Part shown: positions 5,746-50,470 of the stretch, piece by piece
Layout: each line of letters begins with the position of its first letter
Numbering within the stretch: the first letter of the stretch is position 1
DNA from: Octopus bimaculoides
Lineage: Eukaryota
Length of the DNA: 64,000 nucleotides
Reading direction: 5' to 3'
NCBI RefSeq assembly: GCF_001194135.2
Contig: NC_068991.1
Location: 53,552,810 to 53,616,809, forward strand
Program-made: the position numbers and the translations under genes
Notes under the pieces: generated by a model
What the model was told of the DNA's origin: nothing
Seen by the model: the letters and a program-made list of their open reading frames with translations, nothing else
The model's database searches: none

Positions 5746-7171
5746 ACTCACTGGAAGAATATTTTAAATCTTATCTTTCAAATACAAATTGCTGAGCAAT
5801 TTCTTGTATGAAATGCAACCAGTTGTAAATTGCTTCTTGATCTTAACCTTTGTTGCAATAAAAGCAGAAATTCTTAAAATAGTAATTATGCTGAGAAAAT
5901 GAGTTACCTTTTTTTTCCCTTCTTTTTATTATCCTTAAAGTTTGAGTGGAAACAAAGTGATTTTTTTGCTTTTGGTTCCTGTTGTATCCAGTTTATCTCT
6001 GAACTGATTTGTACTTTGTCGTTCATCTAATGAAGCATGCTTTCTTCATTTCTTTGTAGTCTTTGTAGATTCTCTGAATTCAAGGCTCGTGTTACACTGA
6101 AATGCTGTGAGACGGGCCTGGATATGGGCCCTAACTTAAACAAACATATACTGATGAGGGAAATATTTGCATTCTGAAATATAGTTATCAAAGAATATTT
6201 AATATCAGGAACTATTCATACAATAATGGAACTACATTTATTAAGATTATGAATGTTCTGATATTCATTATATTGTGGCTGATTTCATCTCTAAGGGTTG
6301 TCAGGCATCTTATTCCAGGTTCTCCACATAGTAAACCTGACACCTGCCTTCAAGAAAAATGAACGTTAAATAATGATGATGATGATGATGATGAGTAATT
6401 TATTGACAACCGCTTATTTCAAACATTTAGACATTTACATTCATGAATTTTATTTTATTTTTAAGGGATTGCTGGATTTGAAATAGAAACAAAACTAAAT
6501 TATTGTCAAAGCTCGGTAATGCTCAACAGAAATAATTGAAAAGGAATGGAATTTTACCGTTTTTTTCGCATGGAAATCCCTATCCTTCAAAACAAGGTAG
6601 TGGGCTTTGAAATTATTTTGTAAATTTCATACATTTTCACTAAACCTTTCTCTCTTTATCTCTCTCTGCCTACCTACATATTAAAATATCTCTTTTATGC
6701 TCTCTCCATATATTATTCTACCTATTTTTCTCATTGATTTTTTTTGCATTCAATCATTTCTTGCTACCAGTCATAACATAAGTATCTTTTCTTTACTCCC
6801 TAGTTTTCATTGTTTATCATAATTGCATAAAATTATTCTTATTTCTAATAATTTTTGGTAGTTTTTCTTGTTTGCCTGTAAAAATTAAACTACAATTAGT
6901 AATCATCCATAATTATTTCTACAGAGAAAATTAACAATAGGATTTCTTCTATGTAAAACGGCAGTAGTAGTTTTACAGTTTATTCCAGTAATGTATGAGT
7001 AATCTATTATAAGATGCAGGTGTATTCTATACCTGTATTTTGCCAATTCCTAAAGGATAATCTACAAATTTAAGGCTGTTTCTAGATTTCCATAAACTAA
7101 GGCTCCCTTTCACCTTAGCGTCCATAATTCAGGTGATGCAGGAATTATTAATGAATGAACTGGCTGATTAA

Positions 7172-12540: not shown

Positions 12541-12846
12541 CGATTGTCAAACGATTTGGCATTTAGAGAACTTGTACCGAAAGATTGCCCAACGTTTCGC
12601 TGAAACCATTATTATAATAGAATTACATTGGTCTGTTGTTAAGAGTTGTTTAATTACGGAAAAAAACCAGATTTTCTTTTTAGTAACAGCTTTTTTTTTT
12701 GCTTTTAATAATTTTGATTGTATTAAATTTGTAGGTTATTAATTCTTATTTATTATTTTATAACTTTATCCACTTTAAATTTGTAAATTACATTTACTAT
12801 GCCATTCCAAGACTAATTCTTAGTCTGCTTTATTCCTCTTTTCAAG

Positions 12847-12869
12847 ATGTGATATCTTCATTTTGCAAA
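12847..12869 (+). other. Candidate 23-nt 5'-UTR micro-exon
   Basis: Pyrimidine tract ctgctttattcctcttttcaag| followed by 23 nt and a perfect |gtaagt donor. No transcript evidence. Confidence 0.3.
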
Positions 12870-15518
12870 GTAAGTGAATTTATATAATTTTAATGCTTAT
12901 GATACTGACTGGCTCTACAGATGTCACAAAACAATGGTGATGCTGCTACTGCTAAATATGTATAGTATTTAGATAGTGTTTTGGGGTATTATTGAAGTTG
13001 GTTAAAGCCTAGAGATAATATTTTGCATTGGTGAAAAGAGACGGTTTTAGTTTCCTTTTCAAAGTTTAAGATAATCCAAGATTTTTAAACAGTAATTTTC
13101 AGCCCGTAATATCTTAAATATCGTTTTCAATGGTCATTTTTAGACAGTTTTCGATTGAAAAGGTTTCTCAAAGAAGAGCTCAATGAAGTGAGAAATAAAT
13201 CATGTACTCCTTTCTTTTTCCTTTTTCATGTTCTTTCCTTGTTTTGCAAATTACTTAGTGATCTTACTGGTGCTGATGACATGAAAAAAAAGAAAGCACC
13301 CAGTACACACCTTATGGTTGTGGGTATTAAGAAGGACATCCAGCTATAGAAACCACACCAAAGCTGACATTGGAGCTTGATGCAGCCTTACAGATCACTG
13401 ATCCTGCCCTTTCTATGCCAGCATTGAAAATGAATATTAAATGATGATGATAATGAAAGATACTTTTGGAGCTTAGAACCATATTTTTAAATGTAGATAT
13501 AGTCATGTAATAGTAATTAATCTTGCCCACATTTATTAATCTTGCACACATACTTCTTTGGAAGAGAATTCTAACAATAATACAAACAAAATTGTATTGT
13601 TATTTACTTTCCAATTTTTTCTTATCAAAAATTGGGTTGGAATTTCAGCAGTCAGTTTTGGAAATGACAATAACATGAACAAGAACTTCAGTCTTAATAA
13701 AGGTTAAGAAATTTCCATGTTCATTTTGTTGATATTTCAATCTAGAGAACATAGTTTTCAGAAATATTGATGTTTGTAATATTGCAATAGATTGTTGAAT
13801 GGTAAAACTATAATTTGATGTTTGGCATTTATTTGAAAGTAGTTAAATATTAAAAATAAGTGATATTTTTTGCTTGAGAATGATAGCAAATACTTAGAGG
13901 AGTTGATGTCCTGTAGAAAATGTGGTAAAGTATAAGATAATAAATGTAAATGTTGAGGAAAATATAACCTAGGATTTAATTTAGGGTATTTTTATGAGTA
14001 AAGACTGTTCTTGTCTTTTAGTTATGGAAAAGTTTACTATAAGTTAACAAATGAGATGTCTTATTACTTCAGCAAGTAAGGTGAAAGCTAGGCTTTGCTG
14101 GGGAGGTCTAATAAAATAAAAACATATCTGGAATTGTCTCTCCTATTTACCAAATACTTAAAGTAATATTTTCTTTTATTCTCTACCTTTTTTTAATTAG
14201 ATTTTTGTTGCTCTACCTTAAATATGTTCATCCCTACTGAATTATTGATCTTCATGAAGATGACATTTTTGAGTAATTAAAATATTGCATATGAGCATGT
14301 AAAAAATTAGGAGAGAAAATAATTGAATCTAAGAATGACATTTTAGTTCCTATAAATGTTTAAATTATCTGTGTAAAAGGTAACAATTAAACAGATGTTT
14401 CATCAAAGTTTTCTTTATATTAACATTTTCTAAATGTTAAAGCATTATTTACCATAAGGTGTATTTATATAATATTGAATAATTTCCATGACATTTAGTA
14501 GAATATATTGTGGAAGTCTGTAAATGCCACTTTTATTTTGTTTTATTTTGTTTCAGAAATTTACCAAGCTATATATTTACTCATAATTTTTCTCAATACA
14601 GTTTTATTTGTAAGTTCGTTGTATTATTTAGTTTGTATTTTAATTTTTTTATGTTTCTACAAGAGTCATTTCATAGGTGTGTACATGTTTGCATAAGATC
14701 ATAATTACTATTTAAAAAACAAAAGCAATTCCCCTCCCTGCCTCCTTCCCCCATATTACTCGCTATAAAAAGAGGTGAAATTAACATTAATTTCTGAAGT
14801 AGAACTTCTCTTTAATATATAAGCTTATATATAATTTCATCTACTTGACACATTTGTTAAAGTATTGTTTTATAGGCTCTTTCACTCTTATCAAATTCCC
14901 ATTTTTATATGATTTACTGTTATTAAAAAACAAAAAAAAAAAAATAAAAGATGGTTTGTACTTATTAGGAACCTTTCTGTTTAAATTTATTTCGATATTT
15001 ACTGAATAGCCAGCACAAGTTTTTCTGTTTTGACAAGGAATTTTATAACTTTCAATGAAACCTAAGTAGAACACAACATATTTTTGTGAAATCTACTCGA
15101 CTTGGCAGTTCTTAGACTACTATTACAGCTAATAAGAAAAGTTATATTATACTATTTATTTATTACATTTATTAGTTATACATACAATTCATTAGCTGTT
15201 AAAGTACTCGAGCATTGATGCAGTCAGAATTCAAGTAGGTATCAGACCCAATAGTATGGTAAGTCCTGGTTATATAATAATGCTTTCTTTCTCTATTGAA
15301 CAACTACTTAATTTTATTGATATCAATGAAGTAGGGGCAGTTATGTTTCATTAGTCTGCAGTGCTCAGTTGAAGTTCTTTTAATATATAGTTAATGGAAC
15401 ATCTCATCTCATATCCTTTATCAAGTCTCATGATATAGCAACACTTTTTCGCCATAGTGCACAGACTAAAAAAAATAGTTTACATCAAAGTTAACCTTTT
15501 AAGAAATGAGGTGATATA

Positions 15519-20616: not shown

Positions 20617-20693
<77 letters not shown>

Positions 20694-20713
20694 AGAGTAT
20701 CTTGGATTGCTGT

Positions 20714-20919
20714 ATGTCTACGCTTCGAGAATGGAAAAAGTTAGCCTGGTTTGGCACAATTGCGTTCACACTTTTTACGTTAATGAACTTTTTTCAATAC
20801 ACAAAGAACCAGACTAGCATCGATGCCAGAAATAATATTCCAGCTGGAAAGGAAAAAGGACATCTGAAGACCATCATCGACATGTTATGTCCAAACAGTG
20901 GGACACTCTGCACTGAGAG
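20714..20919 (+). CDS. Coding exon 1 of a putative type II membrane glycosyltransferase-like protein (cytosolic tail, signal anchor, stem)
   Basis: Acceptor tttag| at 20695 and ATG at 20714. MSTLREWKK is followed by hydrophobic LAWFGTIAFTLFTLMNFF. Donor GAG-AG|gtttgt at 20920 (phase 2) matches the next exon. Confidence 0.8.
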
Positions 20920-21119
20920 GTTTGTTAGTCTTATTTCTATCCACCCATAATATGTAGCATTAGGAATGTTGCTTCTCTCAAGTACTTTTCCATCGTTGAA
21001 TAAAGTTTTGAGCACCAAAACATTTTTGACTATGCTTATTTATTTCCATCATAAGTTCTTCAGATTTTACCATTTCAAAACACAAATACTTCATAATGCC
21101 CTGTTTCTCTTCTATAAGT

Positions 21120-21275
21120 CGATCACACTGACCCCAGTACTTAACTGGTACTTAATTTATTGACCCTAAAAGGATGAAAGGCAAAGTCGACCTTGGCGGA
21201 ATTTGATCTCAGAACGTAACGACAGGTGAAATACCACTAAGCATTTTGCCTGGTATGCTAATGATTCTGTCAGCC
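21120..21275 (-). mobile_element. SINE family B (central ttcatcctttcggggtcgataaaataagtaccag domain)
   Basis: Reverse complement of the family B consensus seen in the arrays at 36-47 kb. Confidence 0.75.
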
Positions 21276-21341
21276 TTATGAATGATTAATAATGAAAAAA
21301 AAATTGTGTAGATGTAGATGTATTCTTATTTATCTGAATTG

Positions 21342-21390
<49 letters not shown>

Positions 21391-21480
21391 TACTATTGTA
21401 AATATAAGGGTAATAAATTAGAATAATTTATTACCACTAGTTAGCATACATAAATAATAGTCATAAGACGTGACGTATTT

Positions 21481-22127
21481 TTAAAAATATAAGAGTGTAT
21501 AAAATATTTTCATACACAAAGAGGAGACCATTGGCAGGACTCTTTACATTCTAAAAAGGCCAGTTAAAGCTCAAACCACAAAAAGAATTCATGAGGCATG
21601 CTGTTATAACACTAGAATGAAAAAAAAAATGAATTAGTTAATCCTGAACTTGAGTTTCGCTATTAACTGCCAAATCTGTAGCTCATCAGCAGAATTGCTA
21701 ATTAATGAATAATTATGTAATAATTTTAATTCTGAGGCTATATAGGATACAGTTTTAAATTTCTTTATTTACTGCTGGACTATATATCTATGCTCATGCA
21801 CTAAGTTCAAACCCTTAATGGATAAAGATGTAACTGACTTACTTGCACACGTGTTTTCAGTATGTATTTGCAACTACATAATTATTCATTAATTAGTGAT
21901 TCCACTGATGAGCCACAGATTCCAAATTAGTGCATTTGGCAAATAATAGCGAAACTCAAGTTCAGGATTAACTAATTAAATTTTTTTTTTGTTCTAGTGT
22001 TATAATGGCATGCCTCATGAATTCTCTTTTTTGTGGTTTGGGCTTTAACCGGCCTTTTTAGCATGTAAGAAATCCTGTCAGTGGTCTCTTCTTTGTGCAT
22101 AAAAATATTTTATACACTTTTATATCT

Positions 22128-22130
<3 letters not shown>
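21481..22130. mobile_element. Fold-back MITE with ~240 bp inverted arms, intronic
   Basis: 21481-21720 is the reverse complement of 21876-22130 apart from scattered substitutions and one ~15 bp indel. The spacer is ~155 bp. Confidence 0.9.
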
Positions 22131-22169
<39 letters not shown>

Positions 22170-22170
<1 letters not shown>

Positions 22171-23383
22171 CATCATCATCATCGTTTAACGTCCACTTTC
22201 CATGCTAGCATGGGTTGGGCGATTTGACTGAGGACTGGTGAACAGGATGGCTGCACCAGGCTCCAGTCTGACCTGGCAGAATTTCTACAGCTGGATGCCC
22301 TTCCTAACGCCAACTACTCCGAGAGTGTAGTGGGTGCTTTTACGTGCCACCGGCACAAGGGCCAGTTAGGTGGTACTGGCAATGGCCACGCTCAAAATGG
22401 TGTTTTTTACGTGCCACCAGCACAAGTGCCAGTGAGGTGACGCTGGTAGTGATCACACTCAAATAGTGCCATTTACATGTCACTGGCATGAAAGCCAGAC
22501 AGCTGCTCTGGCAATGATCACACTCGGACAGTGCTGTTAGTGCTCCGCTGGCACAGGTGCCGGTCATCGAATATGGTTCAATTACGATTTCGATTTCACT
22601 TTCTCCAACAGGTCTTCGCAAGCAGAGTTTAGTGTGAAATGAAGGAGAGATTGGCATGGGTGCCAGTCGTCGAATTAAATTCGATTTCGATTTCCTCAAC
22701 AGGTCTTTGCAAGCGGAGTTTAGTGTCCAATGAAGTAAAGATACGAATAAGTGAGCTGGCTACACTTCTGGCAGAGGCCACGGATTATGGTCTCACTTGG
22801 CTTGCCGGGTCTTCACACGTACTGCATATTTTCAAAGGTCCCGGTCACTAGTCATTGCCTCGGTGAGGCCTAATGTTCAAAGGTTGTGCTTCACCACCTC
22901 ATCCCAAGTCTTCCTGGGTCTACCTCTTCCACAGGTTCCCTCAACCACTATGGTGTGGCAATTTTTCACACAGCTATCATCACCATTCTTGCCACATGAC
23001 CATACCAGCGCAACCATCTCTCTTGTACACCACAACTGATGCTTCTTAGGTCCAACTTTTCTCTCAAGGTACTTACACTCTGTCGAGTATGCATATTGAC
23101 ATTACACATCTATCGGAGCATACTGGCTTCATTTCTTGCAAGCTTACGCATGTCCTCAGCAGTCACGGCCCATGTTTCACTGCCATGCAGCATGGCAGTT
23201 CATACACATGCGTCATACAATCTGCCTTTTACTCTGAGCGAGAGGCTCTTTGTCACCAGCAGAGGTAAGAGCTCTCTGAACTTTGCCCAGGCTATTCTTA
23301 TTCTAGCAGCTACACTTTCAGCACACCCTGCCCCGCTACTAACTTCGTCATCTAGATAGTGGACTACTTCTAGTTTTTCTTCC
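22170..23383 (-). mobile_element. RTE-clade LINE fragment (same family as 18345-19145)
   Basis: Antisense of the RT C-terminus (reverse complement of GRGRPRKTWDEVV at ~22900-22940) plus the 3' UTR tandem repeats and (cat)n tail. Runs into a gap. Confidence 0.9.
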
Positions 23384-25544
23384 NNNNNNNNNNNNNNNNN
23401 NNNNNNNNNNNNNNNNNNNNNNNNNNNNNNNNNNNNNNNNNNNNNNNNNNNNNNNNNNNNNNNNNNNNNNNNNNNNNNNNNNNNATATATATATATATCA
23501 ATAATAATAGTGATTGTTTCTTATTAGGAACAAGAGGGTTAATAGGACTGCAAGAGAAGTGCTCAAGTAAGTGAGACGAGTATAACAAACTTTTGTTGCA
23601 GAACAAACAACAAATTTATGGTCATCCAACTAATATAGCACATATCGAACATTTAATCACATATAAAGAAACATAATACTTTTTCTATACATAGAATACG
23701 GAAGCACAAAATCACAGAAGATGAAACAATACTTGATTTAGACAGGTATAAAGAAAAAAAGTGAGTACAGTCTATCACGTATAAAAAAAATTTTTTAAAT
23801 TAGTAAATTAATACTTCAACGTCTAAAAAAATTTTTTTTACATTATAAAACCTAAAATAAAATAATAAATATATAAAAATATAAATAGATAAATATAAAA
23901 ATACGTATATAAAAAACATAAATACATAAGGTATAGATAAATGTTCATCGATTAAGAATATTTTATGATTAAAAGTTACTTTTTAAGGTAGAAAGAAACC
24001 TTTTAAGGTAAAAAGAAACCTTTTAAGAAAAGCTGGTATCCAAGCAAAAAAAAAACAACATAATTACAGTCCCTATGGCCATTTTAGGGGTTCATTAACG
24101 TAGTCAATGCACGGGGGTGCATTACGGTAATGACTCCTTCGTCGGGGGAAAATAGTAACACCACATACCAATACGAGATTTCTTTGTAATTTGAGATCAT
24201 TGTGATGAATGGTCAGTTTACCCTAACACACCACTAAAAATTACTAACTTTATAAACTTATTTATTACATGGGTACATACACTTACTTAGAAGTCATAGT
24301 ATATGTATATGTGTGCATACACACACACACTCATATAGACACATACGCTAACATGCTCGAGCGTATACAAGTACGCCTCATTATACACAGCTCTAAATAC
24401 ATGAATATACACATACATCTCCACACATATCTACAGTTACACCCTAGTAACCATATACATACACTCACATATCCACATATCCTTAAGCGCACGTACAGAT
24501 ATAGATATATCTCCATGTATAGTATCCGCATACATGCACACACGTCCATCCATGTATACACACATACAGTACACCTTATAAGTGTATATCTTGTTTATGA
24601 GTACATAACAGTTATATTTAATATACTATTCTCAATAGATCGAGTTACATATATTTAAAAAATTAAAAAAAAAAGTTTTTTTGATCTGTCTATGACATTG
24701 AAATGAGGGATGATCAATAAAGGAAATGGTTTAAAAAGAAAAGAAATATGTGATAAAAGGGAGCAGCAAATTAACAATAAGTGAAATAATTGATATAGAG
24801 ATATAAGGTTCTATAGGAATAGAGTTTTAAAAGAATCATTTTAAAAGAAATAGAGTTTTACAAGAATCGTTTTTAAAAAATTAATAGTGGAAGAGCATTA
24901 GAAGTAGTAAAAATACTGATAGAATAAACCGGTGATATTAGAAAGATGTTGTAAAATATTAAAAATATCAAAACCCATCAGATATATTTGGAAATTCATA
25001 AAAGATACATGACAAGATACATAAAAAGATAAATAATGATAGGTTACAAAGAGGTGAAAATAAGATGAAAGGGTAAAAAGTAAAGAGAAAATGTAAAAAA
25101 ATAAAATAAAATGAAATGAAAATTAAGATGGAAGTTAAAAATAAAGTATGAAGAACAATTATAATAGTCTGTTGTGTCTGGGGAGAGTCATTTTCTCATT
25201 GTGCCTTAAAATTTAACACACTCACCAGTAAAATTTCACTTATTTCTTATAATAGTAATAATATAATAGTAATAATATAGTGATTGGAAAAATATTGTGA
25301 TTGGAGAAATTTCAGGTCTATCTACTTGTGTAAATTATATGTCATTGGGCAACTTCTACTATATTCCTATTTTAATTGTTTAGGAAGTGTTATATGAAGT
25401 TAAAAGAGTCTAGGTTCCTATCAACTAATGATTACTAGTATAATATTGTTATAAACATTATTGAAGTTATTAGTGCTAGCTAATAGGACTTATGCGTATG
25501 GTAGTGTTATTCGAAATTTTAAAGTCAATCACTATATTATTTAG

Positions 25545-25598
25545 ATATGTTCGTGCCAGGTAAAAGCACCACTGATGCTATATTTCTAGTGAGACAGC
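25545..25598 (+). mobile_element. RTE reverse transcriptase fragment cut by an assembly gap
   Basis: FVPGKSTTDAIFLVRQ, the typical GF.PG.ST.DAIF..RQ RT motif. Confidence 0.7.
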
Positions 25599-26257
25599 NN
25601 NNNNNNNNNNNNNNNNNNNNNNNNNNNNNNNNNNNNNNNNNNNNNNNNNNNNNNNNNNNNNNNNNNNNNNNNNNNNNNNNNNNNNNNNNNNNNNNNNNCA
25701 TACATATATATATATATATATATCTAGCATAATGGTTTGACAAAAGAGACTGATAGAATAAGTACAATACTAGAAATATAGTACTGGGATTGCTTTGTTT
25801 TACTAAAAACCTTTCAAGGTGATGCCCCAGCATTGTCACAGTCCAATGACCGAAACAAGTAAAAGATAGATGAAAGATGTTATTTTTTCAAAATGGCATT
25901 TGTCAGTGAACTGGACTTTTAATGAATTTTGTTAGCTTTTATTTAATATCTGATTGAGTAGATTTATGTATGAAAATCAATCTTGGCCTGACCATCCTGT
26001 TTTTATATGGATATCTAGGTGATTCCATTATTTATTATGTCCTTTTCCTTTTAAGAAGTGAGCATGTAATATGAAGGCAACATAGCCACTATTTCTAGCA
26101 GGTTCAGTCATCATATAGCAGACTCGCTTGTTGATTGTTTCTGTTTAACATACATAATTAATGATTCTTATTTGTGATAGTTTTATAAAAAGTATCATTA
26201 TTTTGATACTCTGATAATTAGAAATAGCTTTAATAACATTCATTTACTATTAGACTC

Positions 26258-26680
26258 AAGGCAGTATGCTGGCAGAATTGTCAGTATCTTGGACAAAAAC
26301 CTTAGCAGTATTTTGCCTGCCCTTATGTTCTGAGTTGAAATTCTGCTGAGGTCGACTTTGGTTTTCATCTATTCAGGATCAATAAAATAAATACCAGTTG
26401 ATCACTGGGGTTGATGTAATCAACTAGTCTCCTCCCCCTAAATTTCAGGCCTTATGCCTATAGAAGAAAGGATTGTTAGACTTGAGTAGGTGACCTAGCA
26501 GAATCATTAACGTGCTAGACAAAATGCTTAGTGGCATTTCGTCTGTCTTTACATTCTGAGTTCAAATTCTACCAAGGTTGACTTTACCTTCCATCACTTT
26601 GGGGTAGATAAAATAAAGTACCAGTCAAGCTTGTCTCTTCTCAAAATTGCTGACCTTGTGCCAGAATTAGAGAGAGTTAT
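26258..26680 (+). mobile_element. SINE family B head-to-tail dimer, strongly CpG-decayed
   Basis: Two consecutive copies starting ~26258 and ~26480. Confidence 0.8.
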
Positions 26681-26981
26681 TAAAATTTAAGAAATAGTTA
26701 GTTTTAATATGGTCCCAGGTCAGTTTGTTATTGAGCAGACCTGTGACATGCAGATATCCAGTTGAATGACCAAGAATGACCTATAAATCTGTTGTTTCTG
26801 GTATACTGTGCTTGTGTGTCGTTGAGAAGCATACTGCATGCTCTGACATCCAGTGATGCATTCTCGTGGGACTTACCTTGTCATCTTAAAAAAGGAATAC
26901 AAAGAAACCAGCTGAATATTTCTGGGTGAAGTTGTTGAAGGAAAAGGTTGTGATTGTTGTTTATTTTCAGGTGAACCTTAA

Positions 26982-27201
26982 GCTCTTTAGCACTCAGGTT
27001 ACTCTGTCAAATGTAAAGCTTATTCATTCACATCGTTTTCAAGTAGTCATGCATTATCTCATAACTATTATATTTTGATGATGTGATTGTTTATTGTTAG
27101 AATGACATTGTAGGGTAAGTGTGAGAGACTAGATCTGGTTGGTTTGAACATAAAACAGAATATCTGAGGGGCCTGATATGGTTGGTTTAAATGCTAAAGG
27201 G
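26982..27201. mobile_element. piggyBac-like MITE
   Basis: TTAA|GCTCTTTAGCA ... TGCTAAAGGG|TTAA, with the internal sequence shared with 7172-7391. Confidence 0.75.
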
Positions 27202-27704
27202 TTAAAGAGCTGACCTATAATTAAAGGTATTGCTGCTGTGATTATCTCATCTGCTTCTCAGATTGTGTATCTTGGACTACATCATTCAGTGTATCTTTTT
27301 CTTATTTAAGATGGTGGGGCATGTTTTCAATTGGAAATGGAGGTGAAGATTTGACTGCTATTTCTATCTGTTTAAATGACCACATAAAGCACCTTCTTTG
27401 TTCAGTTTTGTAGATTTGAGGTTCACAAACTTGTGGGTAGTTTACAGGATTTTTTTTTTTAAAGATGGTGGTGGGGTGGGAGAATATATTTTGCTGTCAT
27501 TAGACTGTGTGACCATACTGGAGCACTGCCTGGTAGAATTTTTAGTTGAATGAATCGATACCAGTATTTATTTTTTTTAAAGCCTGGTACTTATTCCATT
27601 AATGTCTTTTGCTGAACTGCTGTGTTACAGGGATGTGAACCCACCAATACTGGTTTTGAGGTTTCTTGTTTTTATTAATCATAATTCTTCTTTTCCTTTT
27701 GAAG

Positions 27705-28647
27705 GATTGAAATGAATGGCAAAGAGGATATATTCTCTGACTTCAGTGAAAAATTACGACGCCATGTGGAACAATGTATTGAAAAGTTGCAAAACTTTCC
27801 TCCGGTTACTTACCAACACACCCTTTTGACTCTCTTCACAACATGGGATTATCATGATTCTAAGAAAGAACTCCATGAAAACACCGTCCGTAATTGGCTT
27901 GCATTAGGTCCGTCCGTCAAGGTGATTGTCTTCTCTACCAATCCTGAGACAAGAATTTTCTGTGAAAAGATTGGTTGTAATTACCAGTCTATCACTGTTC
28001 AGCGTGTAACTGGAGTGCCTTTATTGAAATCAATGTATTTAGAAGCACAGAAATCATTTGATAGCTTTTTTTATGCATTTGCCAATGCGGATATTTTATT
28101 TGAAGCAAATCTAATCAAGACATTGGAGCGTGTTTTGTATATGTTTAATAATACAGAAAAGGCAATTTTGATAATTGGACAACGGACAAATGTTATGAAT
28201 GTTACCAAAGAAGAAGCTGTTCCAGTTGATTCTGTGACTAAAATTGCCCTGGACCGTGGAACTATATTCCGAACTGATGCTGAAGATTATTTCATTACAT
28301 CAAGGCCATTTCCATGGAAAGCATTTCCAGATTTCATTGTTGGAAGTCCAGCATATGATAATTGGTTAGTTGCATATGCTATTCATAATAATTTCTTAAC
28401 GATAGATGCCACAAATTCTATCATAGCTGTACATCAGACCACGAGGTCTGGAAACTATGATGGGCATCACAAACGCTTTACGGATTATAATCTTAAATTA
28501 ATTAGAAAAATACGCTCACGGGTTAATGTCCTTGCTGGACACACAATTTGTACAAAATATTTTGCTCAAAAAGACTTTTGTGGGCTCACAGAAATTCTTC
28601 TGCGCAGAACAAATCCTTGTGCCAAGCCAAAATCCAGAAGAGGATGA
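27705..28647 (+). CDS. Coding exon 2: luminal nucleotide-sugar-transferase (GT-A-like) domain of an uncharacterised 382-aa protein
   Basis: Acceptor ttcttttccttttgaag| at 27704 completes AG|G (Arg) in frame with the 311-aa ORF. Motifs: TLFTTW, FANADILF, IIGQRTNV, AEDYFIT, PDFIVGSPAYDNWLV, IDATNSIIAVHQT. Three N-glycosylation sequons in the spliced protein (NQT, NNT, NVT). The function assignment is from recalled motif similarity. Confidence 0.85.
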
Positions 28648-39939: not shown

Positions 39940-41126
39940 AAGTAAGTTAAAAATTAAATGCACTTTTGTTTCCGTAATTTATTTTTAAAAAGCAGGATAT
40001 GAACAATTATATTATTTTTCGACATAGTCTTCTTGCTTTTCGATGCACGTCTTCCAGTGGTCCACTAGCTTGCTTATTCCATCGGAAAAGATTTTCGGCT
40101 GGTCGCGCTGGATGTTTGAGCGGTCCAGAGAGGTAATAGCAGAAAGGGGTGAGATCTGAGCTATACGCAGGTTGCTCTAGCAACTCGATTTTTGTTATCG
40201 AAACTCAATTTTTCAATGTTTCAACGGTGTGGGCGGCCGTATGAGGGCTTGCATTGTTATGCAACAATAACACTCGCTTTGACATTAGACCTCGGCTTTT
40301 GGTGCGAATTTTCTGGTGTTACTTTGTCCTCAGTATTTCACTGTAGCCTGCACTAGTAACTGTAGACCGCTTTGCTAGGTAATGTTCCAGTATAGGCATT
40401 TTTGCGACCCCAAAATGGTTAGCATCACCTTTTCCAATGGAAGGTTGAGTCTTGAATTTCTTTTTTGCTGGCGATTCCGGCTGTTTCCATTCCATAATAT
40501 GCCTTTTGGATCCTGGCTCAAAGTAATGGACCCAGGTCTCATCCCTTGGGACTATTCTCTCCAAAAATAACCTCGCCTTCATCGTTGTAGCGGTCGAATA
40601 AACGTTGACAGATCTCCACATAATTGCGCATATGCGCTTCGATAAACTCTCTTGGTACCCCTCTCGCACAAACTTTACAAGGCAAAACTTGGCGTGGATT
40701 ATTTCATAAGCAGAATCATGACTAATCTGCAGAGAACATGTCACCTCATTGGTGGCCATTCATCGGTTCGCCAGAACCATCTCTCGAACTTGTTGAATCT
40801 TCATGTCAGTGGTGGAGGCTATTGGGCGCCCTGCTTCCTCTTCGTGCTTCACGCTTGTCCGGCCATTTTTATATTTCACAATTCACTCACACACACTCCT
40901 ATGCAGCAGAGCGATGTTCCTGTATGTAATGAAAGCCTGTGATAAATTTCAGCCCTTGACACATCTTCAGACCCCCCAAAAAATCGTACTAGTGATCTCT
41001 GTGCTTTCTTGGTGCTCATTGCCAGTGCAGCGGTCACGTTTTCTCTGTAACACAAGAAAGAAAACTTGAGCAATCAAAATCCATCTTCGGTTACGTAACA
41101 ACAAGAATCCCACTTTTTAGTACGTA
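39934..41126 (-). mobile_element. Inactivated mariner transposon (irritans/marine-like lineage)
   Basis: STKKAQRSLVRF, DETWVHYFEP, MEWKQPESPAKKKFKTQPS, NASPHTA, YSSDLTPS and C-terminal KTCIEKQEDYVEK. Many frameshifts. TIRs not cleanly resolved, so the ends are approximate. Confidence 0.9.
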
Positions 41127-48345: not shown

Positions 48346-50470
48346 CTTTTAATTTGCATGTTTGTTACAGTCCCTTGCTGAGACACACCCAACGTCCTAG
48401 GGTGAGTGAAGGATAAGAGATGTTACAGTACAACTGAAAGCTTGGGAAAAGGAAGTGGCAGGGGTAGTAGTGAAATATCTTCATGCTCTAAAAGAACACA
48501 GACATTTAAATAGATAAGTTTTTTTTTTTAAGGATGTGAGTAGTACTTGTTAGTACAATCTTTTGGATTTCTTTGAAGCATGGTTCTCCTGGGATCTTAT
48601 CTAGATGTTTCTGACATCCTTTTTTTATCATACCTGAGGCGCCTACAATAACAGGAACAGTTCTCGCTTTAAAATGCCACATCATTTGTATTTCAATTTC
48701 CCGGCCTTTAATTTGACAACTTCCTTTACAGATATATTTTTATCAGTAGGAACACTTACATGTATTAGTCTACAAGTATTTTCTTCCCCGTCTTTAATAA
48801 TTATATCTGGTCGATTAGCCTGGATAGTTCTGTCAGTGTTGACTGGAAAATCCCAGAGGATAGTAACATTTTTACCTTCAATGACTGGCTCAGGATGATG
48901 TTCATACCAGTAAGCAGGAGTGCTGATTTTGTAATGTTTACATATTTTCCAATGTAAACACTGTCTTACCATATCGTGGAGATTTTTGTATTCGTTTGGT
49001 GACAATACAGGACATCCCGAGACGAGATGGTCTATTGTATCGTCAAATGTGTCACAGAATCTGCATTTAGGGTCAGAACCGTTTTGAAGAACGTTAGCCT
49101 GGTAGTTTTTGGTAAGCAAGCTTTGATTTTGTGCCGCCACTATGAAACCTTCAGTTTCTGCTTTCAGTCCTGAACTTCTCACTGATGGGTTGTTGCTTGG
49201 TCTACATCAACATTTCGACTTCGAAGTATATACTGTCCATGCAGAGGCTTCTGGTTCCACCGCTCCTCAATTTGTTTCTGCCTGTTCTTTTTTGCAGTCT
49301 GCTCGATCCGTTTTGCTTCTTTTTGGCAGTGGTTTCAGGTTCTTCATCTAATTTAGGGTTAATGCCAAGTTCCCTTGTGAATTTGCAAGCTTCCTTGTCA
49401 ATAGAATGTGATTTTTTGCTGCTTTCGTGTTTGTACACAAGCCGCAGCATCCAGTCCTCTGTACTAGACAAGTACCAGTTCGTTGCTATTGTGGAGTTCT
49501 TAAAGCACAGTTCTACCTGCATCATTCTTCTCCCCCCCCCCCATTACTTCTAGGCAGGTACAGACGATCAACGGCTGCTTTTGGGTGGTGCATGTTCTTT
49601 GATGTTAGTAGTTTTCTTGTCTTTTCTGTCCAGGCATTGGAGCTCTGTAAGATTCCAGTTAACGATGTTAAAACTATATAAGACTACTGGAAGTGCCAGG
49701 ATGTAAATGGCTGCGATACGATTTTTGGAGTTGAGTTCAGTTTTTAGTATGAGTCTTATTCTCCTGTAATACTGTTTTCTTATTTTTTCATTTATAGTAG
49801 CATGTTGTGTACCATCTCCTTCGTTTATCCCCAGGTATTTATAACTTTCTTGTGGGTCAAGCTCCTTGATGGTAGCGTCGGTATCTAATTTAATGGAAGC
49901 TGTTTGCCTGAGCTTGCCTCTTACAAAAGTTGCTCTAGCACACTTATTAAAGCCGGAATCCATCCCGATGTCATTGCTGAACTCTTTAACGGTTGTTAGC
50001 AGCCCTACTAGCGCTTCGTCATTTCTAGCAAACAGTTTCAGGTCGTTCATATAAAACAGATGGCTTATTGTCGTAAACCCATATTCAGTTCGTTTGGGAG
50101 TTGGATCAGTGCCATGCAAAAGAGTAATTGGGAGAGGGAGTCACCTTGAAAGATACTTCGTTTGATGTTGATGTTAGATTGGCTCATCCCATTACTATGG
50201 TTTAGGAGGAGACGTGTGTTCCACTTGGCCATGCCTCCTTGTAAGAATTTGGAGACGACAATAGAGATCTCATATATTTCAAGGACCTTGAGTAGCCAAT
50301 TATGTGGGACACCATCAAACGCTTTCCTGTAGTCTGTCCATGTCACACTCAGGTTCTTCTTTTTGCTCCGGCAATTCTCTACAATCATTTTATTTACGAG
50401 TAACTGATCTTTTCACCCATAAGAATTCCTTTCACAACCTTTTTAAGCTTGTGGAAGGATAGACTTCTGT
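48346..50470 (-). mobile_element. 5'-truncated R4/Dong-clade LINE (RT, CCHC knuckle, restriction-like endonuclease) embedded in (TAA)n
   Basis: WTDYRKAFD, IFQGDSLS, LFYMNDLKLFA, YKYLGI, ETEGFIVAAQNQSL, CRFC...TIDHLVSGC, ILWDF, NRPDIII. (ATT)n lies on the left and (AAT)n at 50480-50565 on the right. Confidence 0.95.

What the first reader, a model, noticed from the sequence alone, without database searches (positions are those of the whole stretch)
20714..28647. Uncharacterised Golgi-type glycosyltransferase-like gene with an NxD motif and a single-exon catalytic domain
The spliced 382-aa product has type II topology and a luminal domain with FANADILF where GT-A enzymes have DxD, then GQR, DYF, GSPAYDNWLV and AVHQ. 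From memory this motif series resembles bacterial GT2-like proteins and unnamed invertebrate proteins rather than a named vertebrate GT family. The whole domain sits in one 943-nt exon grafted to a separate anchor exon, as expected after retroposition or ancient horizontal acquisition. It may represent an undescribed glycosylation activity.
Basis: partly seen in the sequence, partly recalled or inferred. Interest (0 to 1): 0.75.

Follow-up and report, generated by a model that had tools for sequence, protein, structure and literature searches.

The report
Unclassified GT-A glycosyltransferase gene in octopus
This is a real, conserved octopus gene for a membrane-anchored enzyme that has the shape and key residues of a sugar-transferring enzyme, but it belongs to a large family that no database has named or tested; the family is shared by molluscs, an annelid, a few protists and many bacteria.

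Summary
Window 20714-20919 plus 27705-28647 splices (GT/AG) into a 382-aa ORF. It is identical to RefSeq XP_052827774.1, "uncharacterized protein LOC106870604 isoform X3" of Octopus bimaculoides. Both assembly gaps lie inside the 6.8-kb intron. The Argonauta orthologue has the same intron position and phase with only 287 nt, so no exon is hidden.

The protein has one N-terminal membrane helix and a luminal domain that AlphaFold models with confidence as a GT-A fold. The nearest solved structures are GT2-type transferases, but only loosely (TM about 0.4-0.5). Pfam, NCBIfam and PDB sequence searches find nothing. N196-x-D198 aligns with the DxD of GT2 profiles. N196, D198, D263, D287 and H312 are invariant, or nearly so, in 60 sequences from animals, protists and bacteria. 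dN/dS against Argonauta is 0.09.

The family is very large: 4,578 cluster representatives. In Anaerolineae its gene sits in a conserved nonulosonic-acid/glycan operon.

The "grafted anchor exon" idea is not supported. Paralogues are intronless including the anchor, and this gene has further 5' exons. Eukaryotic members form one clade apart from bacteria, so direct transfer into molluscs is not shown. The enzyme's activity is untested.

The parts
6546..6596 (+). Alternative 5' exon (ATG...AAG|GT) that gives the 23-aa N-terminal extension of RefSeq isoform X2
   Evidence: tblastn of the X2 N-terminus and direct reading of the sequence; donor GT at 6597-6598
14562..14609 (+). Alternative 5' exon segment used by isoform X1 (approximate bounds); another piece lies at about 12842-12870
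   Evidence: tblastn of the X1 N-terminus
20623..20690 (.). (AT)34 microsatellite that abuts the acceptor of the ATG exon
   Evidence: TRF
20696..20919 (+). Exon carrying the conserved start codon (ATG 20714), cytoplasmic tail, membrane anchor and start of the stem; acceptor AG at 20694-20695, donor GT at 20920-20921
   Evidence: same exon end and phase in Argonauta
20741..20797 (+). Codons 10-28, single transmembrane segment (signal anchor)
   Evidence: Kyte-Doolittle maximum 1.32 at residues 10-28; AF2 helix 4-33
20920..27704 (+). Phase-2 intron of 6,785 nt that holds both assembly gaps (23384-23484, 25599-25698) and several AT-rich repeats
   Evidence: orthologous intron of 287 nt in Argonauta
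27705..28647 (+). Last coding exon: rest of the stem plus the whole GT-A catalytic domain, and the stop codon
   Evidence: AF2 pLDDT above 90 over most of residues 100-375
28084..28092 (+). N196-A197-D198, the family's NxD at the DxD position
   Evidence: Follows beta-strand 191-195; aligns with D-x-D of the GT2 profile; N and D invariant in 60/60 sequences
28177..28191 (+). G227-Q-R229-T-N231 motif
   Evidence: G227 and R229 conserved in 59/60 sequences
28279..28293 (+). A-E-D263-Y-F265; D263 is an invariant acidic residue
   Evidence: D263 in 60/60 sequences
28342..28371 (+). G282-SPAY-D287-N-W-LV; D287 sits at the start of helix 286-296 and is the best candidate for the xED-type catalytic base
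   Evidence: D287 in 59/60 sequences, one gap; helix position; the xED Asp lies at the start of helix alphaF in GT-A enzymes (PMC7185993)
28426..28437 (+). A-V-H312-Q313; H312 is the candidate C-terminal metal-binding histidine (C-His)
   Evidence: H312 in 60/60 sequences; C-His concept from PMC7185993
28676..28766 (+). Four AATAAA signals (28676, 28710, 28732, 28761) downstream of the stop codon

Best explanation
Octopus bimaculoides LOC106870604 encodes a type II membrane protein of the secretory pathway. Its luminal domain is most likely an active, metal-dependent, inverting GT-A glycosyltransferase of a family that is not yet classified.

Proposed mechanism (inferred):
- D198 of the NxD motif and H312 hold the divalent cation that binds the diphosphate of a nucleotide sugar.
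- N196 contacts the ribose or the metal sphere.
- D287, at the start of helix 286-296, or else D263, deprotonates the acceptor hydroxyl.
- Donor and acceptor are unknown.

Evolution: the gene is one of a handful of cephalopod paralogues of a family that is greatly expanded in bivalves and gastropods. The family is also present in an annelid, in Blastocystis and other protists, and in many bacteria. In Anaerolineae the bacterial gene lies within a conserved surface-glycan operon. The intron that separates anchor and domain arose within this orthologue lineage.
For: Shown:
- The ORF and splice sites are intact, and the product is identical to a RefSeq model.
- The intron position is conserved in Argonauta.
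- A third cephalopod yields 389-aa contiguous ORFs on 2-3 kb Logan contigs in 165 blocks of the collection (each at least one run). Genomic-type contigs of the same species give only an exon-2 ORF that starts 1 nt after the junction.
- dN/dS is 0.09 overall: 0.07 for exon 1 and 0.09 for exon 2.
- The AF2 model has pLDDT 86 and the order beta1-alpha-beta2-alpha-beta3-alpha-beta4-NxD.
- Foldseek against PDB gives best hits AvpGT, PmHS2, LARGE1, K4CP, BcsA and SpsA (E 1e-7 to 1e-5).
- An independent model of the bacterial homologue P0295 (pLDDT 93.5) has only glycosyltransferases in its top 50 hits.
- Giant-virus and phage GT-A transferases are the best viral matches.
- hhalign places N196-A-D198 on the D-x-D of the operon's GT2 proteins.
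- P174, N196, D198, D263 and H312 are invariant in 60 sequences from three groups, and D287 is conserved in 59 of 60 with one gap.
- Mollusc and bacterial profiles match at probability 99.9, E 2e-36.
- Bacterial context: in about 50 of 64 Anaerolineae loci the gene lies between a CMP-sugar synthetase (CTP_transf_3) and a GT2. NeuB, GT4, a TagB-like protein and oxidoreductases surround them. This resembles the B. subtilis sps locus (PMC7439481).

Inferred:
- Inverting mechanism. An invariant Asp at the xED position is typical of inverting GT-A enzymes (PMC7185993), and the nearest structural neighbours are GT2.
- Golgi residence, from the architecture alone.
Against: - No activity, donor, acceptor or localisation has been measured for any member.
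- Structural similarity to solved transferases is only at fold level (TM about 0.4-0.5, 9-15% identity).
- The profile match to GT2 is weak (probability 27%).
- The first residue of the DxD equivalent is Asn in every member, which is unusual and might indicate different metal or nucleotide chemistry.
- Which of D263 and D287 is the base, and which Gly is the G-loop, was judged from spacing and predicted secondary structure, not from a superposition.
- RNA from this species could not be examined.
- CAZy itself could not be queried.
Confidence: 0.66

Rival explanations
1. The fold is GT-A-like but the chemistry is not classical Leloir glycosyl transfer. The enzyme might transfer a sugar-phosphate or polyol-phosphate, or use a CMP-activated acidic sugar (a nonulosonic-acid or Kdo-type transferase). 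The invariant Asn in place of the first Asp would reflect this.
For: The NxD motif is invariant in all 60 sequences. In Anaerolineae the gene directly follows, and often overlaps, a CTP_transf_3 cytidylyltransferase, next to NeuB and a TagB-like gene. The CMP-legionaminic acid transferase of the comparable B. subtilis sps system is still unidentified (PMC7439481). One bacterial fusion protein carries a faint GT29-like stretch.
Against: Known sialyl/NulO transferases usually lack a DxD-type motif and a metal requirement (stated in PMC7439481). This family keeps D198 and a C-terminal His. In other bacteria the gene has no CMP-sugar genes nearby. No Pfam sialyltransferase or Stealth/LicD signal was found. 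The top structural hits use UDP-, GDP- or dTDP-sugars.
Confidence: 0.15
2. The octopus protein is a catalytically dead GT-A relative, such as a lectin-like partner, chaperone or regulator in the manner of Cosmc. The Asn in the DxD position would mark loss of activity.
For: The first Asp of DxD is replaced. No activity is known. Many GT-A families contain pseudoenzymes (general knowledge).
Against: The Asn is not a lineage-specific loss. It is present in every bacterial, protist and animal member, together with D198, D263, D287 and H312. Bacterial members sit in biosynthetic operons. Purifying selection is strong across the whole domain.
Confidence: 0.06
3. Evolutionary reading of the first reader: the gene descends from a bacterial gene acquired horizontally by a mollusc ancestor (or from a retrocopy) and later joined to a host anchor exon.
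For: Distribution in eukaryotes is patchy, and no named vertebrate, arthropod or nematode protein appeared among the roughly 250 hits listed. Coding sequences are intronless in Octopus, Haliotis and Ostrea paralogues.
Against: The intronless paralogues already contain the anchor, so no grafting is needed. Eukaryotic sequences (molluscs, Capitella, an MMETSP protist, Blastocystis) form one group apart from the bacteria in 99/100 NJ bootstraps. Mollusc monophyly has only 52% support. Any transfer would therefore be older than molluscs, or between eukaryotes, or the family could be ancient with many losses. The tree is a simple NJ tree with only 21 bacterial sequences.
Confidence: 0.25
4. The feature is an artefact: a misassembly across the gaps, contamination, or a chance ORF.
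For: Two gaps lie between the exons, and the window has many gaps.
Against: The same two exons are adjacent in Argonauta, 287 nt apart. They belong to a single gene in O. sinensis and O. vulgaris annotations. The ORF is conserved at dN/dS 0.09. Spliced orthologous transcripts exist.
Confidence: 0.01

Closest known systems
CAZy family GT2 / Pfam PF00535 (e.g. B. subtilis SpsA, E. coli K4 chondroitin polymerase, Pasteurella heparosan synthase 2, TarP/TarS)
   Same: GT-A fold. Acidic metal-binding motif after beta4. Conserved Asp at the start of a later helix. Best structural matches for both the octopus and the bacterial model. The NxD aligns with the GT2 DxD.
   Different: No PF00535 hit at any threshold tried. 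Profile-profile probability is only 27%. TM is about 0.4-0.5 at 9-15% identity. The motif is an invariant NxD, not DxD. The family has its own motifs (TLFTTW, GQRTN, YDNW, HQ) that were not part of any GT2 match found here.
GT-A common core as defined by Taujale et al. 2020 (PMC7185993): DxD, G-loop, xED, C-His
   Same: Candidates for all four elements occur in the expected order: N196-x-D198; G254 or G227; D287 at a helix start (or E262-D263); H312.
   Different: The first Asp is Asn. The assignment of G-loop and xED rests on spacing and predicted secondary structure only.
Metazoan Golgi type II glycosyltransferases in general
   Same: Short cytoplasmic tail, one signal-anchor helix, a poorly ordered stem (pLDDT below 50 at 34-52 and 62-71), a globular luminal domain, sequons and conserved cysteines.
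   Different: No orthologue in vertebrates or model invertebrates was seen among the named hits. Bacterial relatives lack the anchor.
Bacillus subtilis sps spore-crust locus (legionaminic acid pathway; PMC7439481)
   Same: The bacterial members' operon combines NeuB, a CTP_transf_3 cytidylyltransferase, a GT2, a TagB-like protein and an RmlD-like reductase, as the sps locus does.
   Different: No member of this family is described in the sps locus. The comparison concerns the bacterial relatives' neighbourhood, not the octopus gene.

Membership tests
GT-A fold glycosyltransferase superfamily | Single Rossmann-like alpha/beta/alpha domain that matches solved GT-A structures | tested here: met
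   AF2 pLDDT 86 (octopus) and 93.5 (bacterial homologue). Foldseek probability 1.00 with E down to 1e-7 or 5e-8 against GT-A transferases. Top 50 hits for the bacterial model are all glycosyltransferases.
GT-A fold glycosyltransferase superfamily | DxD-type metal/nucleotide motif after beta4 | tested here: met
   N196-A-D198 follows strand 191-195 and aligns with D-x-D of GT2 profiles. It is the variant NxD, invariant in 60/60 sequences.
GT-A fold glycosyltransferase superfamily | xED-type catalytic Asp at the start of helix alphaF (inverting enzymes) | tested here: inconclusive
   D287 (conserved in 59/60 sequences, one gap) is at the start of helix 286-296, and D263 in A-E-D is invariant. 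Without a superposition I cannot say which corresponds to xED.
GT-A fold glycosyltransferase superfamily | C-terminal metal-binding His (C-His) | tested here: inconclusive
   H312 is invariant and lies 25 residues after D287. Metal coordination cannot be tested here.
GT-A fold glycosyltransferase superfamily | Glycosyl transfer from a nucleotide sugar | not testable with these tools
   No biochemical data exist for any member.
CAZy GT2 / Pfam Glycos_transf_2 (PF00535) | Significant match to the family profile | tested here: not met
   No hit at E up to 10 for the octopus protein and E up to 1 for 60 relatives. hhalign against the operon's PF00535 proteins gives probability 27%.
Pfam Nucleotid_trans (PF03407, GT77-related) | Significant match to the family profile | tested here: not met
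   No hit, even for homologues that UniRef calls 'Nucleotide-diphospho-sugar transferase domain-containing protein'.
Sialyltransferases (GT29 and bacterial NulO transferases) | Sialyl motifs / PF00777 match, or a GT-B or GT42-type fold | tested here: not met
   No PF00777 hit in the family domain. The fold matches are GT2-like.
Type II Golgi membrane protein | Short N-terminal tail, single signal-anchor helix, stem, luminal domain | tested here: met
   K8-K9 precede hydrophobic residues 10-28. AF2 helix 4-33. Disordered stem. Sequons at N32, N217 and N234.
Type II Golgi membrane protein | Localisation in the Golgi | not testable with these tools
   Needs microscopy or fractionation.
Horizontally acquired bacterial gene | Recipient sequences nest within or beside a bacterial donor clade | tested here: not met
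   Bacteria and eukaryotes separate in 99/100 NJ bootstraps. Method and sampling are limited.
Horizontally acquired bacterial gene | Patchy distribution in the recipient kingdom, broad in the donor kingdom | tested here: inconclusive
   Named eukaryotic hits are molluscs, Capitella, Blastocystis and one MMETSP protist. At least 589 bacterial species matched.

The most novel reading that the evidence does not exclude
The family is a genuinely new glycosyltransferase family (it would be a new CAZy family) whose bacterial members are the missing transferases for CMP-activated nonulosonic acids in sps-like loci. Its animal members were acquired from microbes before the mollusc-annelid split and multiplied in molluscs. 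On this reading they attach an acidic or otherwise unusual sugar that underlies lophotrochozoan-specific glycans.
Probability: 0.08. Interest if true: 0.85.

Novelty: new variant of a known kind. Interest (0 to 1): 0.55.

Why it matters
A fold-A transferase family with thousands of members carries no Pfam, NCBIfam or PDB label (CAZy itself could not be queried). It has dozens of copies in bivalve genomes. In Anaerolineae it holds a fixed place in surface-glycan operons. Mollusc glycans contain many linkages whose enzymes are unknown, so this family is a concrete set of candidates. The invariant NxD offers a clean mutational test. The bacterial members may help to complete nonulosonic-acid glycan pathways. 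For genome annotation, a profile of this family would rename several thousand 'hypothetical' proteins.

Tried and rejected
- Pfam, NCBIfam and PDB sequence searches found nothing. Queries were the single protein, 60 relatives, distant members, bacterial members and two profiles.
No other route was tried.
- tblastn against plasmid and phage collections gave no match.
- Literature searches found no description of the family. Terms tried were the locus name, mollusc HGT, 'nucleotide-diphospho-sugar' and nonulosonic-acid transferases.
- A hidden exon in the gapped intron is rejected on the Argonauta intron length and the orthologue alignments.
- A tandem paralogue within the window is rejected: family tblastn hits only the two exons.
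- A nucleotidyltransferase identity was considered. hhalign against the neighbouring CTP_transf_3 proteins gives probability 0.4%. RmlA/KdsB hits for the octopus model have rmsd 14-16 Å and are absent from the bacterial model's top 50.
- The first bootstrap script timed out and the Kimura distance failed at high divergence. Poisson distances were used instead.


Full report
**1. What is in the sequence.**

The window reads ATG at 20714 and a donor GAG|GTTTGT after 20919. An acceptor TTTTGAAG|G lies before 27705, and TGA is at 28645-28647.

An exact look-up shows that this protein is XP_052827774.1 and three sibling accessions, [quoted passage not shown]. The window is therefore O. bimaculoides. 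NCBI's gene model uses the same junction.

Isoforms X2 (405 aa) and X1 (463 aa) differ only by alternative 5' exons. I located these at 6546-6596, about 12842-12870 and about 14562-14609. All join an acceptor just before 20696. The conserved start in Argonauta and a third cephalopod is the ATG at 20714. The gene therefore has more than two exons and spans at least 6.5-28.7 kb.

**2. The gaps.**

Both gaps (23384-23484 and 25599-25698) lie inside the 6,785-nt intron and are followed by (AT)n runs. The exon-1 frame stops 9 codons into the intron.

The Argonauta hians orthologue has a 206-nt first coding exon, a 287-nt intron in the same position and phase (after codon 68 plus 2 nt), and then the 946-nt exon. 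Alignments with orthologues at 97%, 83% and 71-72% identity show nothing missing at the junction. The gaps do not affect the coding sequence, and no exon is hidden in them.

**3. RNA evidence.**

Reads for this genome could not be obtained. Indirect evidence comes from the orthologue of another cephalopod, P0003.
- It occurs as a contiguous 389-aa ORF on 2.3-2.8 kb Logan contigs in 165 blocks of the collection (each at least one run), with shared 3' ends.
- Members of the same 90% cluster from an 18-kb ENA contig and a few Logan contigs encode only a 313-aa ORF. That ORF starts at a TTG one nucleotide after the junction.
- This is what spliced RNA and unspliced or genomic DNA would give if the intron is conserved there too.

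Between Octopus and Argonauta dN/dS is 0.09 (exon 1: 0.07; exon 2: 0.09; dS is about 1). Both exons are under strong constraint.

**4. What the protein is.**

- Topology. Residues 10-28 are the only strongly hydrophobic stretch, preceded by K8-K9. AF2 predicts a helix at 4-33, a disordered stem (34-52, 62-71) and a compact domain from about residue 100. Sequons lie at N32, N217 and N234.
- Fold. The model (pLDDT 86, pTM 0.79) has the order beta1(110-115)-helix-beta2(140-145)-helix-beta3-helix-beta4(191-195), followed by N196-A-D198. This is the GT-A arrangement.
- Structural neighbours of the octopus model. Foldseek finds AvpGT, heparosan synthase 2, LARGE1, K4 chondroitin polymerase, BcsA and SpsA (E 1e-7 to 1e-5), but with TM of only about 0.4 and 8-15% identity.
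- Structural neighbours of the bacterial model. A separate model of the bacterial relative P0295 (pLDDT 93.5) gives only glycosyltransferases in its top 50: Leptospira GT 6p61, PmHS2, WrtF, AvpGT, K4CP, SpsA, TarP, TarS.
- Viral structures. The best matches are giant-virus and phage GT-A proteins.
- Sequence families. There is no sequence-level match to Pfam, NCBIfam or PDB for any member tried.
- Profile comparison. The family profile against the neighbouring PF00535 proteins of the bacterial operon reaches only 27% probability. It does place YaYaN-s-D-ILF on IAYtD-x-D-vyF, so the NxD falls on the DxD. The same test against the neighbouring cytidylyltransferases gives 0.4%.

**5. Conserved residues.**

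I compared 60 catalytic domains: 30 mollusc, 9 other eukaryote and 21 bacterial.
- P174, N196, D198, D263 and H312 are invariant, and D287 is conserved in 59 of 60 with one gap.
- G227, R229, G254, G282, D303 and N331 are nearly invariant.

The Asn is therefore a hallmark of the family, not a sign of decay in octopus.

The GT-A core defined by Taujale et al. comprises DxD, a G-loop glycine, an xED Asp at the start of helix alphaF (the base of inverting enzymes) and a C-terminal metal-binding His (PMC7185993). This family offers N196-x-D198, G254 or G227, D287 at the start of helix 286-296 (or E262-D263), and H312. I infer a metal-dependent, probably inverting, transferase. The residue roles are inferences from spacing and predicted structure.

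**6. Relatives.**

- Close hits. The first search found 244 proteins. All named ones among the best 120 are molluscan. Cephalopods have a few paralogues and bivalves have many, often adjacent in locus-tag order.
- Family size. An exhaustive profile search of 1.84 billion cluster representatives gave 4,578 hits at E ≤ 1e-3 and 706 at E ≤ 1e-30.
- Other eukaryotes. Further searches and cluster look-ups added Capitella teleta (annelid), an MMETSP protist transcript, three Blastocystis subtypes and many unnamed environmental sequences.
- Bacteria. Bacterial proteins are about 300 aa, lack the anchor and keep the same motif series (LTLFT, NA..SW, GTPL, NADI, GQR, DYF, GR.GWDNW, HQ). Mollusc and bacterial profiles match with probability 99.9, E 2e-36.
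- Bacterial spread. In GTDB species genomes at least 589 stretches encode a relative. The best 80 are all Chloroflexota, mostly Anaerolineaceae, including cultured Ornatilinea apprima.
- Mobile elements. There are no matches in the plasmid or phage collections.

**7. Bacterial context.**

In 64 Anaerolineae loci with a clean ORF call:
- The family gene is preceded by a CTP_transf_3 cytidylyltransferase in 53 loci (directly in 42).
- It is followed by a PF00535 GT2 in 53 loci (directly in 47).
- NeuB, a GT4 and an RmlD-like reductase lie upstream. A TagB-like protein, a GFO/IDH/MocA oxidoreductase and an SDR lie downstream. Searches show the same pattern.

This resembles the B. subtilis sps locus, which makes legionaminic acid and whose CMP-Leg transferase is still unknown (PMC7439481). 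Other bacterial members sit beside GT2/GT4 genes without CMP-sugar genes. The context supports a role in glycan assembly. It does not identify the donor.

**8. Exon structure and origin.**

- The closest paralogue (O. bimaculoides LOC106869864, same chromosome record length), Haliotis rufescens P0018 and Ostrea edulis P0119 are each encoded by one uninterrupted ORF that includes the anchor.
- In an NJ tree the window gene groups with its Argonauta and third-cephalopod orthologues (100%), then with the intronless paralogue (72%).
- The anchor/domain intron is thus most simply a gain in this orthologue lineage, not a graft of a host exon.
- All sampled eukaryotic sequences separate from the bacterial ones (99%). 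Capitella, the MMETSP protist and a Blastocystis group branch outside the molluscs with weak support (52-60%).
- A bacterial origin at some depth is plausible, given the breadth in bacteria, the patchiness in eukaryotes and the intronless genes. Direct transfer into molluscs is not shown, and an old eukaryotic family with many losses is not excluded.
- The tree is a simple distance tree with limited bacterial sampling.

**9. Verdict.**

The feature is real and well conserved. It is already annotated as an uncharacterised protein. It most likely encodes an active Golgi-type GT-A transferase of an unclassified family with an invariant NxD. The evolutionary "graft" reading is not.

Novelty lies in the family, not in this locus. 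I could not query CAZy, so the possibility that a recent CAZy family already covers it remains open.

Noticed in passing
window 48682-50119 (- strand): Two ORFs with weak matches to zf-RVT and RVT_1. This looks like a decayed non-LTR retrotransposon.
   Followed up: partly
window 40319-40759 (- strand): A 146-aa ORF (…ETWVHYFEPGSKRHIMEWKQP…). From memory it resembles the C-terminal part of mariner-type transposases. There was no Pfam hit at E ≤ 0.01.
   Followed up: partly
window 20623-20690, 23485-23498, 25699-25723: (AT)n microsatellites abut the acceptor of the ATG exon and the right edge of both intron gaps. The gaps probably mark unresolved AT repeats.
   Followed up: yes
window 6546-6596, ~12842-12870, ~14562-14609: The alternative 5' exons give RefSeq isoforms X2 and X1 longer N-termini. 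The X1 extension adds a second hydrophobic stretch and is not conserved in Argonauta or the third cephalopod, so it may be 5'UTR read as coding.
   Followed up: partly
L015-L094 (Anaerolineae genomes), e.g. L058 2960-9385: A conserved operon: RmlD-like reductase, NeuB, GT4, CTP_transf_3, the family gene, GT2, a TagB-like protein, GFO/IDH/MocA and SDR. No aminotransferase was seen among the recurrent neighbour families within four ORFs, which hints at an unusual nonulosonic acid.
   Followed up: partly
P0121, P0124, P0196, P0250, P0291: The domain also occurs in multi-domain proteins. Examples: three copies in 921 aa, two in 889 aa, two in a 1000-aa MMETSP protist protein, a 546-aa Capitella protein, and a bacterial 933-aa fusion with a radical-SAM domain and TPR repeats.
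   Followed up: no
cluster of P0001 (P0357, 311 aa, Logan contigs up to 4.3 kb): An exon-2-only ORF (starting MNGKEDIF) from an octopus closely related to the window species is present in four Logan contigs. These may be unspliced RNA or genomic reads.
   Followed up: no
UniRef names of P0014, P0046, P0100, P0112, P0250: UniRef calls several homologues 'Nucleotide-diphospho-sugar transferase domain-containing protein', although none matches PF03407 or any other Pfam model here. The name probably comes from a structure-based superfamily signature.
   Followed up: partly
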